A stretch of DNA of 7,841 nt from Vitrella brassicaformis CCMP3155 (GCA_001179505.1 CDMY01000965.1:1-7841), one strand, 5' to 3'. Shown: positions 1 to 7,841, numbered from the stretch's first letter. The notes: generated by a model from the letters alone, not told the origin. A program made the numbers and translations.

Positions 1-74
1 GCCGCCGGCCACCGCCACACACGAGGCGGCCGTCCACACAGAGGACACCGATCCAGCAGCCCACCAGCAGCAGC
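1..74 (+). repeat. Terminal direct repeat, left copy (identical to 7768-7841)
   Basis: Base-by-base identity over 74 nt: gccgccggccaccgcc...ccaccagcagcagc. Confidence 0.97.
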
Positions 75-457
75 AGCAGCCAGGGGGAGAGGCCATCAAG
101 CCACCCCACTGGGCAGAGACCGGCCAGCGGCCCTCCGCCACTGACACAGACAGAGACAAGACGGCCTCTTCCTCCCTCGTCAGCACACAGAGGGGCTACT
201 CGGCCGCCTCCCCATTGGCCACTGCTCGCGGCGGCTACTCTTGGGTTGTGGCCGGCGGCTTCGTGTTGGTGCTGGGGGCCCTCTATGGCGTGGTGCGCGT
301 GTGGCGGAGGACACACTCACACGGCTCACACGGCCACGGGCAGGTGTCTGCTTCCCGTGTGTCTGGTGGCCATGGCGGAAGGGGCCAGCAGCACCGACAG
401 AATGGCTACGATTTGGTACCCCAGACATTCGCCGACGAAAGCGATGACTGGGGATAA
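1..457 (+). CDS. Gene A, 3' part: polyQ, transmembrane helix and acidic cytoplasmic tail ending ...DESDDWG*
   Basis: Frame 2 is open from base 2 to TAA at 455-457 (PPATATHEAAVHTEDTDPAAHQQQQQPGG...). A hydrophobic stretch SWVVAGGFVLVLGALYGVV (239-295) is followed by a basic stop-transfer RVWRR. An in-frame intron at 344-400 (GT..AG, 57 nt) is possible. Confidence 0.75.
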   Translation, partial: PPATATHEAAVHTEDTDPAAHQQQQQPGGEAIKPPHWAETGQRPSATDTDRDKTASSSLVSTQRGYSAASPLATARGGYSWVVAGGFVLVLGALYGVVRVWRRTHSHGSHGHGQVSASRVSGGHGGRGQQHRQNGYDLVPQTFADESDDWG

Positions 458-659
458 AATGAAAGATGGTGTGAGGGTGTCTGTGATGTGATGTGATCCA
501 GACACGGAGATGAAGCTTCGGGGTCTCTGTCTGTCTGTACAGCCAACAGAACGAACAGATAGTTCACACCCGCTACGGGCCAACACACACGCGAAACCGG
601 CAAGTCAAGCCAATCAGCCATCCAGTGTCAGGGTCTCCCCAGATGTCTGGCTGTCTATC

Positions 660-676
660 TGTGTGTGTGTGTGTGT
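660..676. repeat. (TG)n microsatellite in the convergent A/B intergenic region
   Basis: Seen directly in the sequence. Confidence 0.85.
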
Positions 677-1103
677 TTGTTTGTCCATATGGCGGACATT
701 GGACGCATGTTATTTGGATGGCAAAGGTCCGCGTCTGTGTTGGCGGCGTTGGGCTCAATTGACCGATGAGCACCCGCTGTGCACTCAGGAAGCCGACCAT
801 CCAAACACACACACACGACAAGAGGGGCAGTCTGAAGTCTATCAGGCACACCACCCGCCCCCCAACACGCACAACCAAACCCAACGAACACCGAAGCAGA
901 CACCCGCACGTCAACTGGAACCGACACAGACACCAAATAGACAGAAAGACACACCGCACACATCAGGTCATGGCACACTTATCTCCCCCGCCCTTTGATC
1001 TCTCTGCACCGCAACACAAAAGTGGCAGCTGCTGTCTGTCAGGCAAACCCAGCTGGACAGACGAAAGGCCTTACACACTCCACACACATCAGACCAGAAA
1101 ACC

Positions 1104-2132
1104 CTATCGCTTGTACTTCTTCATGATCCCTCTGATCTCCGGCCTGCCCTCCCCCCAATCCCACGGCGTCTTCCCCTGTTGTGATGAGATGAGATGAGAT
1201 GAGATGAGCACACACCACTCAGCCCATCGATGGTGTGAATGTCTGTGTGCACTCACCCTGTTGTTTTTGATGTCCAGCAGAGCACCGCCCCCCCACTCGA
1301 GCCTTTGAGAATGACACACACAGACACAGAGAGAGAGAGAGAGAGGATGAGATGTTCGCGTCAGTCAGTCATCTGTATCGCCCACAGCTGAGACACAGCC
1401 GCAGATTTGTCCCAGTGTGCAGCCCAATGGAGTGCCGTGTCTCCGTCCTGTGTGTGTCATGCACACAAAGGCAAAGGCAATCAATCAGTGAGAGAAGACT
1501 GTGTTGTCTCACCTTGTCCGTCTGTGTGAGCAGGTCCTTTCGTTTGGCATACAGGGCCTTCAACACATCGACGTGACCCTTGTTGCAAACCGCCATTATG
1601 AATGGCGTCTTGCCATCCTGCAATCAACACACACACGCACACAATCGACACACTGAGGCGTCAGAGACATGTGTGTGCTCTGTTACCTTGTCGCGTGCAT
1701 CGATCAGTTTGGGATCCCACTCCAGCAACTTATTGACCGCCGCAGCATGGCCCTTCATGGCAGCATAGTGCATGGCATTCCAACCATACGGCTGCATTCC
1801 ATCACAGCCAACACACATTTTCTCTCACCATCAGCAGTACACAAGATGGTTTGTCTGTGTTGGTACCGAGGTCTCTGTTTGCTGCAGTACGTCAGGTTTG
1901 CTCTCATACATAGCCGACATGACGCCCACGTGACCCTCCCATGCAGCCTTGAGAAAGGGTGTCCACTGCCGAAATGAGAACACACAGACAGACGACTGAG
2001 GGAACTTCTGTCGTCTTCACGATTGCATACCTCGTTGTTGTCTCGTTTGTCGAGTATGTTCTTGCCATCCCTCTTGATCAGTAAACGAACGGACTGCTCA
2101 TCGGCGAACTTGACGGCATCAAACATGTCAGT
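1104..2132 (-). other. Ankyrin repeat region of gene B (~6 repeats, terminal ones partial)
   Basis: TDMFDAVK..., [51 protein letters not shown] and GKTPWDW match the G-x-T-P/A-L-H-x-A ankyrin consensus with 33-37 aa spacing. Confidence 0.92.
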
Positions 2133-4093
2133 CTGCCACACAACCAGCACAAGAACAGCGGCCCATTGACGTGTGGGGTTCAGCTGCTGTCTCCCTGACG
2201 TGTTTGATCTTCGGCTGTGGGGCGCCCGGCGGTGTCTTCACTGACGGCTGCTGGGCGGGGGGCGCTGCACGGCACACAGATCATGTGGTGCTGTGGCTCT
2301 GTGTGTGTGTGTGTGTGTCTCATAGACCTATGTGCTGTGAGGGCGGCTGAGAGGCCTTAGCCACACTCGGCGGTCCCGTTGTGGTGCTGGCCGTGCTCAT
2401 GTGGACACCCGACGAGTGCCCGACGGCAGACACATTGGTGGACGATGCACCTGTCGGAGAATGCGAAACAGCCGCTGGAGGCCAGAACGAGACAAAATGA
2501 CAAACACGTATGCGATCGATCGTGTGCAGCTTAAGCATGTGTAGACGCACCTTGTCGTTTGAAACTTCCTAATAGCCACCCCATCGGGCCCTTCCGCGAC
2601 TGCGTTGCAGCCCCCGTCCCCTGTTCAATTGCGGGCGTCCCCTCATGAGTTCCAGGAATGTCCGAGATCCCCAGCGAGTCGAGAATCTGTCATCAAGACG
2701 GAACAATAATACGTACCCCTCCTCCTTCCCTCTCTGAGTGAGTGCATGTGACTTGTTTGGCTGTGGGCCGATCAGCGGGGTTTCGGGCAAAGCAACTCTG
2801 ATACAACGTCCATCCCACACAGTGAGAGACAAGAACCGCTGAGCTCAGCAATCGACGTTGGAGTAGCATAATATCTGTTTACCTTGATGACCCCTTTGGC
2901 CTTTGCGGGAACGGAGTTGGGGATCTCGGGCGCCTGGAAATAGCCGCAATCACATGCTGTCACGTTCCATGCATCTCCTTTGAATCACCTCTCTGTAGTT
3001 GACGACTTTCTCCATGAGTTCGTCCATCGAGACGCCGTGCAGCTGACAAATGATGACTCCGACGGCCCACATATCCGCCTTGGTGGTCAGTTTAGCTGTG
3101 GAACACGTCACGCCATTCATTGATGTGGCGTCATTTAGGTGGCGCTTACCGTTCGTTTTAAGCGCCTCTGGAGGCATATACAACCACGTCCCAGCAGCTG
3201 CATGTAGACGTGTGACATACACATAGATTTAGGCATCCTTCTCATATGTGTCTCTCTTTACCGCCTTGCACGGACATCGCCGTCTTGCTCAGATCAATCA
3301 CCAGGCCAAAGTCCGTGATCCTGATTATCAACTCTTTGGTCACCTGCATTGCAAACAAACGGCAAATGAACGGTCAAAAGGAATGACAGCTCAGTGTGCA
3401 GCTTACCAGTATGTTGTCGGGTTTAAGATCGCGATGGACAATGTCAAAGTTGTGAAAGGCTTGCACGCCCTCGCAAATCTGTCATCGAGAGGCGGTCTTC
3501 ATTCGGGTCAGTTTGCTCTCTTTGGTGTGTCACCTGTTTGATGAATTTGTCACGGAGGTCGGCTGGCAGCGGCTTCCCTGTCTCGAGGTACGCCTGCAGC
3601 GGGCCGGCCTCGCACAGCTCTGACGCAGAAAGGCGACAAGCAGGCAGAATGTGACAGGAAGACCAGCCAAAGAGAGGGTCTTTACTCCTAGTACCTGTGA
3701 CGATTATGGGCCCGTAGGTCCTGTGTGAGCAGATGCCCAGGAACTTGATGACATTCGGGTGCTTCAGGTACAGCACCAAGGGCTCCACCTCCTTCAAGAC
3801 GTCATCGTAGAGCTCCTGTGCCAGTGAACAGATGACAGCAGCTTCTGTCAAAGGTGTCACTGACAATAATGTGGGTTCCTCACATTCAGATCTGCTTGGC
3901 TTCTTTTCCCCTCCGCGACGACCTTGACAGCCACAGGGTGACCCTTCCACTTACCCTTGTACACAATCCCGAAGGTCCCTCCCCCTGTAGTCGCACGACA
4001 TCAGGCTCAGTGATGACATCTATCGCTACATGAAGGTCTCGAGCTCACCGAGTTTGTCTGCCTCACTGAATGTGCACGTGAGCTCCTTGGGAC
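1104..4093 (-). CDS. Gene B: Ser/Thr protein kinase (TKL-like) fused to C-terminal ankyrin repeats; spliced, 20 exons, 5' end unresolved
   Basis: Manually spliced exons (transcript order): 4093-4049, 3984-3884, 3815-3695, 3619-3534, 3478-3407, 3343-3262, 3197-3150, 3095-2989, 2933-2883, 2797-2753, 2686-2551, 2450-2328, 2264-2200, 2132-2031, 1965-1867, 1791-1687, 1617-1513, 1447-1386, 1302-1257, 1175-1104. All 19 introns are GT-AG, 54-100 nt and phase-consistent, giving about 556 aa to TAG at 1106-1104. Kinase motifs are in order: [59 protein letters not shown]. The start codon was not confidently located. Confidence 0.92.
1186..1208. repeat. (GAGAT)4.6 pentanucleotide microsatellite in the last intron of gene B
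   Basis: gagat gagat gagat gagat gag, inside intron 1176-1256. Confidence 0.9.
2300..2318. repeat. (TG)n microsatellite in gene B intron 2265-2327
   Basis: Seen directly in the sequence. Confidence 0.85.
2753..4093 (-). other. Protein kinase catalytic domain of gene B, apparently catalytically intact
   Basis: The Gly-rich loop, VAVK lysine, alphaC Glu, HRD-x-K-x-x-N catalytic loop, DFG and PPE (APE equivalent) are all present. HRDLK indicates Ser/Thr specificity. [22 protein letters not shown] and VTELC resemble TKL kinases. Confidence 0.9.
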
Positions 4094-4208
4094 CTATGCG
4101 GAGGCGGGGTTGCAGATCAGACGCCACAACAGAGGGGGAACTGGCAGCGGTCCGGTGGGAGACTGGGGGACCCCCACTTGGCCCACACGGAGTCTCTACC
4201 GTCCAGCG

Positions 4209-6674
4209 ATGACAGATCTCGGCAAGAGTTCCTCGCTTCGGATTCTCAACAAAACGAACCTCGATGCATCGGTATTGCTCTTGGTGTTTGAAGCAATATG
4301 GCGTAAGAGAACACTAGTAGGGGTGTGCTGTGTGTGTCAGGTGAAGCTTGTTCCTGTGGCTGAGCTCAAGAAGGTGCGGGAGCAGCTCAAAAAGGCCGAG
4401 AAGAAGTACGACAGGCAGGCTCTCGAAGGAGGGATCAATGTGGGGTTGGGTGACGTCGAGTTGGGCGTCAAAGCAGGGCGGGAGAAAGAGACCGGGTAAG
4501 AACCTGAAGCGAGCAGGGGAATCCTTGTGTCCTTTTCTTTGTTTCCTCAGTCAAGAACAAGAGAAGGAGATGGAAGTAGAGATCGAGTTTGGCTTCTTCC
4601 GTTTGGCAGAGGACTGGCAGCTGCTCGATGCTGGCGCAGAGACGACTCTGGACACCTACACTCCCTGCTGCATCTCCATCTTCATCGACGGCAGCAAACA
4701 CCAGGTCGTCAACCGCATGATCCACCCAGACCGGCTGCGGGATGAGAACGGCATCGTCTTCGTCAAGGCCAACCCTCCTTTTCAGCCTCACAACAAGTAC
4801 TTCCGTCTCCAGAAGAACACAGAAGCCCCACCCTTCCGGCTGCACAACCTCAGCACTCGCTCGGTCCTCACGGCTGTGCCCGGTGTTGGGCTTGGCGAGG
4901 AGGCTTCTGTCGTCATGAAACCGAAGGTCCCCACCAAATCAGGGCAGCCCTCTGACCCGTCGCAGCTCTGGATGGCCCACGAAGATGATCTCTGTGACAG
5001 ACAGACATTTCTTCTTCGGCCTGTTGCCTTCCCGCATCTGACACTGAGGGTCAACAAGAAGTCGCTCGGTCTGGTGTTGGACCATCCCACCATCGGGAGA
5101 GACCCGGCTGACGCAAAGGGGGAGGCGAAATACGAGCAGTGGGAGAAGACGGAGTCTCGTGAGGGTCCTGAAGCCGAGCCTTTCAGTCTGTGTCAGTTTC
5201 TTTCTGCCTGCTGCAAGCCCCCGGTTCCGAAACAGGAAGTGCTTGTGGGACGGCGCGGCAGCGCAGACTATGGCGGGCCGCTGACTCTGTCGTGTGTGGG
5301 CCTACCGGAGCATCTCATGTGTGCGGCCGAGGACATGCTTGTGATGAAGGAGCACGAGAAGCGGACGGCTCACGTGTGGCAGGCCAGTGTACCAATCGTC
5401 GTCAAAGGTACCCATCGGCTGTGGGGAGGGCTGCTCCATTAAGGTGTTGGGTAGGTCTTGGACTCTTGGCTTGTCCTCAGGGGAAACGGTGCCGATCGAT
5501 CGCAAAGGGGCAGCTCAGGACACAGAGACGACAGCAAGCAAAGAGGTAAGGATACGTTGCGGATGGATTCCGTGCCTTTTTTCTCGTGTCTCCTTTTTCA
5601 GAAGACCATCTTTGATGTCTGCGCCGAGGGCGACCTGAAGGAGCTGATCAACTTCATCACCAAGGAGCCCAAGTGTCTCGAAGAGGCTGACGATGACGGT
5701 ATCACGCCCCTGCACTACAGCGCCCAAAACGGCCGGAAGGAGGTGATAAAGGAGATTGTCGAGCGAGGAGGGAAACATCTGATCGAGAAGCGCACGAATG
5801 TCCAGTCGGAGCCCACTCCCATACACCTGGCGGCAAAAAGAGGGCATGTCTCCGTGGTGAATCTGCTGCTGGACCTGAGAGGAGAGCACCTCCTGAAGAT
5901 CAAGGACAAGGTCAGTGTCTCAGGCGCAGACAGAGAAAGAAGTGCCCATCATCGTGTTGTCTGCCGCTTGCTGCGTTCAGTACGGTCGTACGATCGCCAG
6001 CGTCGCTGCGGAGGAGGGACAGCTGGCGGTGCTCAAGGCCATTGTCAATCGAAAGAGCGTCGGCTTTATCCTCTCACTCGAATCAAGCGTAGGCACTTCG
6101 AGTGTCGTCTCTCTTCTGAGCCTTCTGTATACATGTTCTCTTTTCAGGGCCGCACTATCTTCCACGACGCGGCACTTGGCGGCGACATAGGTGTGTTGCA
6201 GCAGCTGATGAAGTGGAGCGGCAGTCGTGATGTGCTGAAGGTCGGTGACAAAGTTGGCATGACGCCCTTGCACATGGCTGCCAGCGGCAATCGTGTGGAG
6301 GCCATAGAATATCTGCTGAAGGAAGGAGGAGTGACGCTGCTCCAGAAGACCAACACGCTTGGCGGAGACATCCGAGACATTTGTCATCACTCTTTTCTCT
6401 TCATCCCTTTTGCGTGCAGCTCGGCAACACCCCAATGCACATGGCGGGTATGCAGGGGCACAGGGAGGCGGTCATCTGCATGGTCAACAAGCAAGGCGGC
6501 CGCGAGCTCCTCAAAAAAACCAACAAACACGTAAATGGGCCGACACAGAGCCATGGCGAAGCAATTTCTCTCCCCGTCTCTGTGTGTGTGTGTGTAAAGG
6601 GGAAGACGCCGATCGATTTGGCAAAGTGGAGGGGCCATGAGGATTTAGCGACAGAGTTGGAGCGTATGGTCTAA
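4209..6674 (+). CDS. Gene C: unknown N-terminal domain + ricin-B-like beta-trefoil + ~8 ankyrin repeats; spliced, 9 exons, ~650 aa
   Basis: Exons: 4209-4271, 4341-4495, 4551-5407, 5481-5545, 5602-5910, 5981-6088, 6148-6357, 6420-6530, 6600-6674 (1953 nt, TAA at 6672-6674). Phases are consistent and acceptors are pyrimidine-rich. One donor (6358) is non-canonical; a canonical alternative lies at 6331. The ATG at 4209 is the likely start but is unproven. Confidence 0.82.
4795..5379 (+). other. Putative ricin-B-like (beta-trefoil) lectin domain in gene C
   Basis: Three internally similar segments end in (Q/H)xW-type motifs: FRLHNLSTRSVLT...PSQLW, FLLRPVAFPHLTLRV...LVL...YEQW and LTLSCVGLPEHLMC...LVM...AHVW. 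Recognised by eye only; no HMM was run. Confidence 0.5.
5602..6674 (+). other. Ankyrin repeat region of gene C (~8 repeats)
   Basis: KTIFDVCAEGD, GITPLHYSAQNG, PTPIHLAAKRGH, GRTIASVAAEEGQ, GRTIFHDAALGGD, GMTPLHMAASGN, GNTPMHMAGMQGH, GKTPIDLA. Confidence 0.92.
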
Positions 6675-7087
6675 TAGAGACAGACATAGCGCTGTGAGTG
6701 CTACTTGACTTATGCTGTCAAATAGGGTGACGCCCGCCTTAGTTTCATTTGTCTTCTAGTAGACCGTAATCAAGCAGCCAATCGACCAAGGGTTATACAA
6801 GGCGTCAATTGGCGTGAGCTGCGTGTCTCCGCAGCCTTCTGCGTGAGCAGTTGAGCATTCCAGCTGGGCAGCATATTGCAATGCTGAGAGAAGCAGTCGG
6901 TGCAGCCCAGACACACATGAGATGAGCGGGCGGGCGGACATCCCATTAACATTGCTGACAGAACGAACAGATAACGGCTTCAGACCCAAGACGAGACGAC
7001 GGGCGAACTCAGAGAGCTGTCTCGTGATCGATTCAGAGCCCAAAAGACACAGACGCAGAGAGAGACTTACTGGCGTCCCTGAGGGCC

Positions 7088-7841
7088 ATGAGAGCTATGA
7101 CGTCATCATTGTACGCCCTCGGCGCATCATACCACATCGACGGCACACCCAACCAATGCAGGTACACACACCAACAGTGTGATCCACACACACACACACA
7201 CACACACATGAGTGTCCCTCTCTCTGTCTCTGTCTCGGTGTGTGTGTGTAATGTCAGCTCAGTTGACGCCGTCGGGCTGGTCGCCAATCTGCTGCGCGGT
7301 GGCGGCGTGGCCGTACACAGAATGACTCGCCCATGGTCGACAGACACATACTCCGACTACTGGTACACACACACACACACACACTCAGCCCTCTGCACAC
7401 CGACCGGCTGACATCTCTCTCTCTGTGTGTCTTTTGTCAGGTTCTCTCTGCCGTCGGCCTATCAGTCGACGTCGGCCATCGAGTCGGCCACTGCAGAGGA
7501 CCTCCCATCAGACCAACACGACAGCAGCACCAGCAGCCAGTGGGGCGACCTGCTCATTTGGGCGCACAAGCGGACAGACACCCACACAGAGAGAGGGAGA
7601 CGGCGGCTCAACGAGACACACACAAACACACACACGGAGAGGGCCGATGAGGTCTGTGTCAAAGACGCCACGGGCGCCGTCCACTGTGTGCCCAAAGGCA
7701 GCGAGACCACAGAGGCAGCAGCCGATACAAACACCACAGCCACTGCTGAGGATGACCGCCACTACCAGCCGCCGGCCACCGCCACACACGAGGCGGCCGT
7801 CCACACAGAGGACACCGATCCAGCAGCCCACCAGCAGCAGC
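7088..7841 (+). CDS. Gene A, 5' part: extracellular, low-complexity (T/H/D/S-rich) region of a single-pass membrane protein; continues at position 1 of the window
   Basis: Exons 7088-7161, 7258-7362 and 7441-end, with GT-AG introns 7162-7257 (96 nt) and 7363-7440 (78 nt), both phase 2 and both containing (CA)n tracts. The splice reads ...PNQC-S-SVDAVGLV...YSDY-W-FSLPSAYQS... with no stop to the end of the window. The frame is also open upstream to 7028, so the true start may lie further 5'. Confidence 0.65.
7185..7208. repeat. (CA)12 microsatellite in gene A intron
   Basis: Seen directly, inside intron 7162-7257. Confidence 0.9.
7365..7384. repeat. (AC)10 microsatellite immediately after the donor of gene A intron 7363-7440
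   Basis: Seen directly in the sequence. Confidence 0.9.
7768..7841 (+). repeat. Terminal direct repeat, right copy (identical to 1-74)
   Basis: Exact 74-nt match that ends precisely at the last base of the window. Confidence 0.97.

What the first reader, a model, noticed from the sequence alone, without database searches (positions are those of the whole stretch)
1..7841. The window is a 7767-bp circularly closed unit, with a gene reading in frame across the junction
Seen: bases 1-74 equal 7768-7841 exactly. Joining the ends fuses the frame that starts at 7441 (...DDRHYQ-PPATATHEAAVH...) to the frame ending at TAA 457. This gives one spliced CDS of 963 nt (320 aa from ATG 7088). Inference: an exact overlap ending at the last base is what a de Bruijn assembler writes for a cycle (74 = k-1 for k=75). 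The real molecule is therefore either a collapsed tandem array of a three-gene cassette or an extrachromosomal circle of nuclear, intron-containing genes. No rep, integrase or transposase is encoded, so a self-mobile element is not supported.
Basis: partly seen in the sequence, partly recalled or inferred. Interest (0 to 1): 0.75.

Follow-up and report, generated by a model that had tools for sequence, protein, structure and literature searches.

The report
Self-closing contig from a duplicated gene cluster
This small scaffold of the alga Vitrella brassicaformis closes on itself only through an 83-base stretch that a sister gene copy on another scaffold also carries, so it most likely reflects an ordinary duplicated three-gene cluster that short reads could not place, not a free DNA circle.

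Summary
Bases 1-74 equal 7768-7841, the unit is 7767 bp, and one reading frame runs from 7441 across the join to TAA 455-457. With exons 7088-7161 and 7258-7362 this gives 963 nt, or 320 codons.

The assembly's size and scaffold count match the published Vitrella brassicaformis CCMP3155 genome. That genome was built with Velvet at k=75, so 74 = k-1 is correct.

The cycle is not isolated, however. The 74-mer also occurs on scaffold C374, inside the last exon of a 91-94% identical sister gene (CEM07001.1). The shared exact stretch is 83 nt and ends at the contig's last base, which is a graph branch point. No 75-mer can tell "unit end joins unit start" from "unit ends join the two halves of the C374 gene"; that needs 85 nt.

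The gene across the join is a 5'-truncated copy of the C374 gene. Its first 283 codons exist only on C374.

The cargo is this truncated membrane-protein gene, a kinase-ankyrin gene and an ankyrin gene. No replication, integrase or transposase domain, LTR or TIR was found.

Best reading: a chromosomal duplicated cluster, either collapsed or misplaced by the assembler. A true circle is unlikely, about 0.1. Reads would decide. The scan has noted other self-closing scaffolds in this assembly.

The parts
1..74 (.). Left copy of the terminal 74-mer. In Velvet output this is the k-1 prefix of the first unit-specific 75-mer.
   Evidence: It is identical to 7768-7841. It is also identical to C374:67238-67165.
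7759..7841 (.). 83-nt stretch identical to the paralog on C374 (67247-67165). It holds the right copy of the 74-mer. The contig ends on its last shared base.
   Evidence: Exact-match scan. The flanking differences are unit 7758 G against C374 A, and unit 75 A against C374 C.
7088..7161 (+). Exon A of the truncated gene G'. It runs from ATG 7088 to a GT donor. It is homologous to the 'YDVIIVD...GTPNQC' exon of CEM07001.1 but has a 2-nt deletion.
   Evidence: One search did not score this exon in the window, although it scored the C374 counterpart.
7258..7362 (+). Exon B of G'.
   Evidence: It matches residues 326-367 of P0001 at 76%.
7441..7841 (+). Exon C of G', 5' part. It runs off the contig end.
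   Evidence: It is 96% identical to P0001 residues 361-495.
1..457 (+). Exon C of G', 3' part, ending at TAA 455-457. It carries a membrane helix at 236-304 and an acidic tail ending ...ESDDWG.
   Evidence: It is 93% identical to P0001 residues 472-618.
1100..2240 (-). Ankyrin-repeat exons of the multicopy 'X' module. The module is probably the 3' part of the kinase gene.
   Evidence: Minus-strand open frames with Ank hits. The module has dozens of copies in the genome, many in tandem.
2696..4000 (-). Tyrosine-kinase-like protein kinase exons, with a Gly-loop/VAVK exon, a DFG exon and a PPE exon.
   Evidence: The exon-level hits are weak but colinear.
4209..6674 (+). Annotated ankyrin-repeat gene. 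Its product is P0002, 611 aa, with an N-terminal domain that matches no family.
   Evidence: Ank hits.
6676..7043 (.). 3' flank of the ankyrin gene, 85% identical to C249:45422-45824. Homology to other loci changes between 7043 and 7078.
7078..7841 (.). Start of tract P, which continues as 1-2585. This part (7078-7841 plus 1-873) is 91-94% identical to C374, with exact runs of 310 and 83 nt.
1..2585 (.). Rest of tract P, about 92% identical to C374 over 1-873 and 77-97% over 1053-2585; 874-1052 has no C374 counterpart. Beyond 2585 identity to C374 drops to 52-74%.

Best explanation
The window is scaffold C965 of the Vitrella brassicaformis CCMP3155 short-read assembly. It is a closed walk of 7767 k-mers in the Velvet k=75 graph, printed with its k-1 = 74-base prefix.

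The walk closes through a repeat node, not through unique sequence. That node is an 83-nt stretch of the last exon of a membrane-protein gene, and it is identical in the paralogous copy on scaffold C374.

The DNA behind it is most likely a chromosomal duplicated gene cluster with three parts:
- a 5'-truncated copy of the C374 PABS-like membrane-protein gene;
- a kinase-ankyrin gene;
- an ankyrin gene.

Either two or more near-identical units lie head to tail and were collapsed, or one unit lies between two copies of that exon, for example inside the C374 locus, and was left over as a cycle once the assembler had threaded C374 straight through the shared node.

Shown here: the overlap, the value of k, the shared node and branch point, the gene content and the truncation. 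Inferred: the chromosomal location and the copy number.
For: Source and method:
- The assembly has 72,700,666 bp in 1064 scaffolds, the same as the published Vitrella assembly, which used Velvet 1.2.08 at k=75.
- Proteins on the window and on C374 are NCBI Vitrella CCMP3155 entries from contigs of 7841 and 95,438 bp.

The shared node:
- The 74-mer occurs three times in the assembly: at both ends of C965 and at C374:67165-67238.
- The shared exact run is 7759-7841. It ends at the contig's last base, where the unit continues with A and C374 with C, because the CAG runs differ by two units.
- Only five exact runs of 75 nt or more are shared with C374. A break placed at random in 7767 positions would hit the right end of one of them about 0.06% of the time.

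The paralogous locus:
- C374 carries the same order in one piece: gene 3' part, X module, kinase. Identity is 91.9%, 85.7% and about 72%.
- The join is therefore a natural adjacency within a real exon.
- The last exon differs from C374's in 26 codons, 12 synonymous and 14 non-synonymous. The two indels are each 6 nt. The membrane helix and the tail are conserved.

The truncation and the family context:
- Residues 1-283 of the parent gene are encoded only on C374.
- The ankyrin module family forms tandem arrays all over C374, C249 and other scaffolds.

No sign of an autonomous element:
- No replication or mobility domain, LTR, TIR or RNA gene was found.
Against: - No contig in the assembly enters or leaves the unit at 100% identity. 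Sections 1-870, 2431-4400, 4301-6750 and 6676-7841 were searched with every candidate scored. A chromosomal array elsewhere would need flanks that were lost or never assembled. Absence of flanks is also what a circle predicts.
- C374 passed a pipeline that used read pairs and then REAPR with 3-8 kb mate pairs. A 7.7-kb skip inside C374 should often have been caught.
- The X-module section 871-2430 could not be searched exhaustively for flank overlaps. Only 40 of 115 candidates were scored.
- No reads, depth or transcripts across the 85-nt diagnostic interval were available.
Confidence: 0.72

Rival explanations
1. Sub-case A of the best explanation. Two or more near-identical 7767-bp units lie head to tail in a chromosome and the assembler collapsed them into one cycle. 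The join 7767 to 75 then exists in the DNA.
For: The k-1 closure is what a collapsed array gives. C374 is continuous through the shared node after pair-aware assembly and REAPR, which leaves 'unit end to unit start' as the remaining pairing. Tandem arrays of the same module family are common in this genome.
Against: An array needs two flanks, and flanks create branch points inside the unit. The contig is unbroken except at the node shared with C374, and no flank contig was found.
Confidence: 0.4
2. Sub-case B of the best explanation. The unit is single-copy and sits in the C374 locus between two copies of the exon. On C374's minus strand the order would be: 5' exons of the gene, shared node, unit 75-7758, shared node, then the rest of C374. 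The closure is then an artefact of threading C374 straight through the 83-nt node.
For: This needs no missing flanks and no extra copies. The only other copy of the exon, and the only copy of the gene's 5' half, are on C374. The contig ends exactly at the branch with C374. No 75-mer spans the 85-nt diagnostic interval. A 530-nt tract (7314-74) that is about 99% identical to C374 looks like recent gene conversion, which favours nearby copies. A truncated second gene copy is what a tandem duplication with one breakpoint inside the gene would leave.
Against: Read pairs of 300-500 bp and mate pairs of 3-8 kb should have placed a single-copy 7.7-kb segment correctly, and REAPR should have broken C374 at the false join. 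The ankyrin gene on C374 is inverted relative to the unit, and the unit's closest ankyrin-gene paralog is on C249, so the locus is not a simple tandem duplicate.
Confidence: 0.3
3. A true extrachromosomal circle of 7767 bp carrying nuclear genes. It could have been excised by recombination between direct repeats of tract P.
For: The walk closes and no flanks are present in the assembly. Direct repeats of about 3.3 kb at 77-100% identity would be a plausible substrate if the unit lies next to C374's copy.
Against: There is no identical chromosomal source locus; the best match is 72-94% identical. No replication gene or recognisable origin was found. The closure runs through a node shared with a paralog and is therefore not demonstrated. 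Earlier notes of this scan list three other self-closing scaffolds in this assembly, with overlaps of 20, 71 and 129 nt; I did not check them, but they suggest a recurrent assembly effect. My two paper searches on Vitrella turned up no paper on a nuclear circle.
Confidence: 0.1
4. The two contig ends attach to further copies of the exon that were never assembled (scaffolds under 1 kb were dropped). The closure is then false and the unit is neither in C374 nor tandem.
For: The pipeline discarded scaffolds under 1 kb and broke contigs with REAPR. The region belongs to a large, fast-turning-over gene family.
Against: Only two copies of the gene's 3' part are detectable in the assembly, with all candidates scored. 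Copies with unique sequence should have left some trace.
Confidence: 0.12

Closest known systems
Velvet or other de Bruijn 'circular' contigs with k-1 terminal redundancy (plasmids, phage, organelles, rDNA units)
   Same: The exact overlap of k-1 = 74 ends at the last base, and the contig length is the number of k-mers plus k-1. The published k is 75.
   Different: This cycle shares at least five exact nodes of 75 nt or more with a paralogous chromosomal locus. Its break point is one of those nodes, so closure is one of two possible pairings at an X-shaped junction.
Collapsed tandem or segmental duplications in short-read assemblies, such as the self-closing PKS-module scaffold of this same assembly
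   Same: The contig closes on itself through a stretch that is letter-for-letter identical in neighbouring copies of a repeated gene. It sits in a gene-family-rich region.
   Different: Here the repeat is only 83 nt and the partner copy lies on another scaffold. The unit carries three different genes rather than one module. I did not check the PKS case myself.
Extrachromosomal circular DNA made by recombination between direct repeats (yeast rDNA and CUP1 circles, Leishmania amplicons; from general knowledge)
   Same: A unit of a few kilobases holding ordinary nuclear genes, with long direct repeats available as substrate if the unit lies beside the C374 copy.
   Different: There is no physical evidence of circularity and no identical chromosomal source. 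The closure is not resolved by the assembly.
CEM07001.1 (P0001), the 618-aa 'PABS domain-containing' membrane protein of Vitrella on C374
   Same: The gene across the join shares its last three exons, the splice positions, the membrane helix and the ...ESDDWG tail, at 76-96% protein identity per exon.
   Different: The window copy lacks codons 1-283. It has a 2-nt deletion in the first retained exon and could start only at ATG 7088. No protein matching it turned up in the database within the length ranges searched.

Membership tests
De Bruijn (Velvet) cycle contig | Terminal exact overlap equal to k-1 of the assembler run | tested here: met
   The overlap is 74 nt. The paper gives Velvet 1.2.08 with k=75 for this assembly.
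De Bruijn (Velvet) cycle contig | Cycle isolated in the graph, sharing no k-mers with other sequence, so that closure is unambiguous | tested here: not met
   The last nine 75-mers (7759-7841) are identical in C374. Four more runs of 75 nt or longer are shared with C374.
Collapsed tandem array | Read depth at a whole multiple (2 or more) of single-copy depth | not testable with these tools
   No reads or coverage values are available.
Collapsed tandem array | Flanking unique sequence that enters and leaves the unit | tested here: not met
   No 100% matches outside C965 were found for 1-870, 2431-6750 or 6676-7841, apart from the nodes shared with C374. Section 871-2430 was not searched exhaustively.
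Extrachromosomal circular DNA or autonomous replicon | Physical circularity: junction-spanning reads with no exits, and exonuclease resistance | not testable with these tools
   This needs reads or bench work.
Extrachromosomal circular DNA or autonomous replicon | Replication initiator or another maintenance function | tested here: not met
   Pfam scans of 36 open frames, including every ORF of 95 aa or more, plus P0001 gave only kinase and ankyrin hits; three other matches were far below their cut-offs and look like chance.
Transposable element | Transposase, reverse transcriptase or integrase, together with terminal repeats (TIR or LTR) | tested here: not met
   No such domains were found. 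The only repeats are microsatellites and the 74-mer.
Spermidine-synthase-like (PABS) proteins, for the gene across the join | Significant match to the Spermine_synth domain, including the glycine-rich SAM-binding motif | tested here: inconclusive
   The parent protein P0001 scores only 13.6 bits (E=0.05) against a cut-off of 22.9, although UniRef names it a PABS-domain protein. In P0001 the motif-I-like stretch lies upstream of residue 283, a part of the gene that is encoded only on C374.

The most novel reading that the evidence does not exclude
The 7767-bp unit is a real extrachromosomal circle of nuclear, intron-bearing genes in a chromerid alga. It would be excised by recombination between the roughly 3.3-kb direct repeats (tract P) of a duplicated kinase-ankyrin cluster, and abundant enough in culture to assemble on its own. 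The circular junction would create its truncated membrane-protein gene.
Probability: 0.1. Interest if true: 0.6.

Novelty: already known. Interest (0 to 1): 0.15.

Why it matters
The main value is practical. It shows that a k-1 end overlap in this widely used reference assembly does not prove a circle or an array. It also shows that one scaffold (C965) and one annotated gene (CEM07001.1 on C374) may be wrongly joined around an 83-nt shared stretch.

It adds one example of patchwork duplication in the fast-evolving kinase-ankyrin clusters of Vitrella, including a truncated gene copy that keeps an open 320-codon frame.

If reads showed a true circle, it would be a first for chromerids, as far as my paper searches go. 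The present evidence does not favour that.

Tried and rejected
Searches for independent protein or transcript evidence across the join:
- The contiguous C374 exon (261 aa) found nothing among proteins of 144-457 aa.
- The window piece 2-454 found nothing among proteins of 83-264 aa.
- The full-library representative search found only the annotated C374 protein, and its 90% cluster has a single member.
- So no transcript was available to phase the 85-nt interval. A full-length transcript-derived copy, for example from MMETSP, could still exist outside the length ranges I could search.

Ideas rejected:
- Mobile element: rejected by the domain and repeat scans.
- RNA gene content: none found.
- Organelle or virus origin: rejected because of the GT-AG introns, 56% G+C and nuclear paralogs.

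Not pursued:
- I suspected the kinase might be a pseudokinase. The exon-level alignments were too weak to locate the catalytic loop, so I make no claim.
- Two paper searches gave no Vitrella paper on nuclear circles and no long-read assembly.

Exons were checked one by one by reference. The exon that crosses the join was searched as two pieces and through its contiguous paralog.
Full report
**1. The observation**

The window is a whole scaffold, G000:C965, of 7841 nt with no N. Bases 1-74 are identical to 7768-7841, and 74 is the longest terminal overlap. The unit is 7767 bp, a multiple of three.

On the circular reading, the frame with codon starts at 2 mod 3 is open from 7412 through the join to TAA 455-457, which is 270 codons.

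- exon A, 7088-7161, 74 nt;
- exon B, 7258-7362, 105 nt;
- exon C, 7441-7767 plus 1-457, 784 nt.

The total is 963 nt, or 320 codons plus a stop. Both introns run GTACAC...TGTCAG. Every number in the finding is correct.

**2. Where the sequence comes from**

The genome has 72,700,666 bp in 1064 scaffolds. Those are the figures published for Vitrella brassicaformis CCMP3155 (PMC4501334). Proteins encoded on the window (P0002, from a contig of 7841 nt) and on scaffold C374 (P0001 = CEM07001.1, from a contig of 95,438 nt) are NCBI entries of that strain.

The paper states that reads were corrected with SGA and assembled with Velvet 1.2.08 at k=75. The assembly was then scaffolded with SSPACE, gap-filled with GapFiller and IMAGE, corrected with ICORN and broken with REAPR using 3-8 kb mate pairs. 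Scaffolds under 1 kb were dropped before scaffolding.

A length of 7841 = 7767 + 74 is what Velvet prints for a closed walk of 7767 k-mers. That last statement about Velvet's output format rests on my own knowledge.

**3. The cycle is not isolated**

The 74-mer occurs three times in the assembly: at both ends of C965 and at C374:67165-67238 on the minus strand.

An exact-match scan shows that unit 7759-7841 (83 nt) equals C374 67247-67165. The stretch is bounded on the left by unit 7758 G against C374 A. On the right the unit continues with A at base 75 and C374 with C, because the CAG run is two units longer in the unit.

The contig therefore ends on the last base it shares with the paralog, and starts 74 bases before that point. 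This is the layout of a node that follows a branch and later runs back into the shared node.

Only five exact runs of 75 nt or more are shared with C374: 7314-7623, 7759-7841, 2452-2563, 990-1088 and 1564-1639. A random break would land on the right end of one of them about 0.06% of the time.

The consequence is that the last nine 75-mers of the contig belong equally to C374. No 75-mer links the unit-specific base at 7758 to the unit-specific base at 75. That takes 85 nt. At k=75 the graph has an X-shaped junction here:
- two ways in, the unit's upstream side and C374's upstream side;
- two ways out, the unit's downstream side and C374's downstream side.

The assembly pairs C374 with C374, and the unit with itself is what remains. 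The closure may follow from elimination alone, or pairs may also have supported it; that cannot be told from the sequence.

**4. What the unit carries**

(a) *A truncated membrane-protein gene on the plus strand, across the join.* The C374 gene encodes CEM07001.1, 618 aa, which UniRef names a PABS-domain protein. Its Pfam Spermine_synth hit is below threshold.
- The window holds only the last three exons, matching residues of about 326-618 at 76-96% identity.
- The 5' exons, residues 1-283, are found only on C374.
- DNA homology to C374 starts at about 7078, near the acceptor of the 'YDVIIVD' exon. The window copy has a 2-nt deletion in that exon. Because of this, ATG 7088 reads into the ancestral frame.
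- The last exon differs from the C374 copy in 26 codons, 12 synonymous and 14 non-synonymous, plus two 6-nt indels. The membrane helix (236-304) and the acidic tail ...ESDDWG are conserved.
- The searches found no protein product of the window copy within the length ranges covered.

(b) *A kinase-ankyrin gene on the minus strand.* Tyrosine-kinase-like exons lie at about 4000-2700, followed by ankyrin-repeat exons at about 2240-1100. The ankyrin part is a module with dozens of copies in the genome, often in tandem.

(c) *An annotated 611-aa ankyrin-repeat gene on the plus strand*, 4209-6674.

No replication, integrase, transposase or reverse-transcriptase domain was found. There is no LTR, no TIR and no Rfam RNA.

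**5. Relation to other loci**

On C374's minus strand, 67932 to 62175 is colinear with unit 7080-7767, 1-873, 1053-2268, a second copy of 1105-2090, and 2090-4109. The join is therefore a natural adjacency within a real exon.

Identity to C374 is 91-94% over the gene region, with runs of 310 and 83 identical bases, and about 86% over the ankyrin module. It is 77-97% over 2090-2585 and then drops sharply to 52-74%. This defines two parts:
- a recently shared tract P, from 7078 across the join to 2585, about 3.3 kb;
- an older section, 2586-7077, that has no near-identical match elsewhere in the assembly.

The ankyrin gene and its 3' flank (5472-7043) are closest to C249, at 78-85%. The C374 ankyrin gene is inverted relative to the unit. 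The cluster is therefore a patchwork, as noted elsewhere in this genome by earlier scan entries that I did not test.

**6. What the real structure may be**

As a linear contig, the window begins with the 3' part of exon C and ends with its 5' part. A genome without closure needs two copies of that exon. The only other copy in the assembly is on C374. The options are:

- **A.** Two or more near-identical units lie head to tail.
- **B.** One unit is nested in the C374 locus between two copies of the shared node, and C374 was threaded straight through.
- **C.** A free circle.
- **D.** The missing halves lie in copies that were never assembled.

For A or C, and against B: a pipeline that used read pairs, followed by REAPR with 3-8 kb mate pairs, kept C374 continuous.

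For B or C, and against A and D: no contig enters or leaves the unit anywhere I could search exhaustively.

For B: it needs nothing that is missing from the assembly. It explains the truncated second copy as the product of a duplication breakpoint inside the gene. The roughly 530-nt, near-identical conversion-like tract suggests neighbouring copies.

Against C:
- There is no identical chromosomal source and no maintenance function.
- Earlier notes of this scan list three other self-closing scaffolds in this assembly, with overlaps of 20, 71 and 129 nt. One follow-up ascribed its case to identical PKS modules. I did not test these notes.

My estimates are A 0.40, B 0.30, D 0.12 and C 0.10. A, B and D are all chromosomal (together about 0.8). 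The best explanation is A or B, a duplicated cluster that the assembler collapsed or misplaced (0.72).

**7. Limits**

- No reads, depth or long reads were available.
- The module region 871-2430 has too many paralogs for an exhaustive search for flank overlaps.
- No transcript-derived protein covering the diagnostic interval was found within the searchable length ranges.

**8. Verdict**

The feature is an ordinary consequence of short-read assembly in a duplicated gene cluster. The decisive test is to count reads across the 85-nt interval from 7758 to 75 and to measure depth over 2586-7077.

Noticed in passing
window 236-457 and C374:66797-67020 (minus strand): The membrane helix and the acidic C-terminal tail ending ...FADESDDWG, with a tryptophan next to the end, are conserved in both gene copies. 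The parent protein is a spermidine-synthase-like (PABS) membrane protein, not an adhesin, so any likeness to apicomplexan TRAP/MIC2 tails is limited to the tail.
   Followed up: partly
window 7112-7113 against C374:67898-67897: The first retained exon of the truncated copy has a 2-nt deletion. This shifts the ancestral 'YDVIIVD' frame and lets ATG 7088 read into the ancestral frame, giving an open 320-codon frame. No protein matching this frame turned up in the length ranges searched.
   Followed up: partly
window 2585/2586 and 7043-7078: Identity to C374 changes sharply at both points: 77-100% inside the tract and 52-74% outside it. This marks a roughly 3.3-kb recently copied or converted tract that carries the ankyrin module of the kinase gene together with the neighbouring gene's 3' part.
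   Followed up: partly
window 865-2430; C374 at 8.5-11, 15-16.6, 28.5-30.7, 38.8-40.1, 45.9-46.9, 52-53.3, 64.2-66.4 and 78-79.6 kb: The ankyrin-repeat module has many tens of copies in the genome and lies in short tandem arrays on C374, C249, C429, C705, C805 and other scaffolds.
   Followed up: partly
window 4560-5440 (P0002 residues about 80-400): The N-terminal domain of the annotated ankyrin protein matches no Pfam family. Its relatives are other Vitrella proteins, one MMETSP transcript (52% identity) and one JGI metagenome protein.
   Followed up: no
window 3245-3373 (minus strand): The kinase exon with the DFG motif is preceded by '...ICRLFAMQV...' where a catalytic HRD loop might be expected. 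The alignments were too weak to decide whether this is a pseudokinase.
   Followed up: partly
C374:67165-67247: If the unit belongs inside this locus, the annotated last exon of CEM07001.1 is a chimera of two gene copies joined at the 83-nt shared stretch.
   Followed up: no
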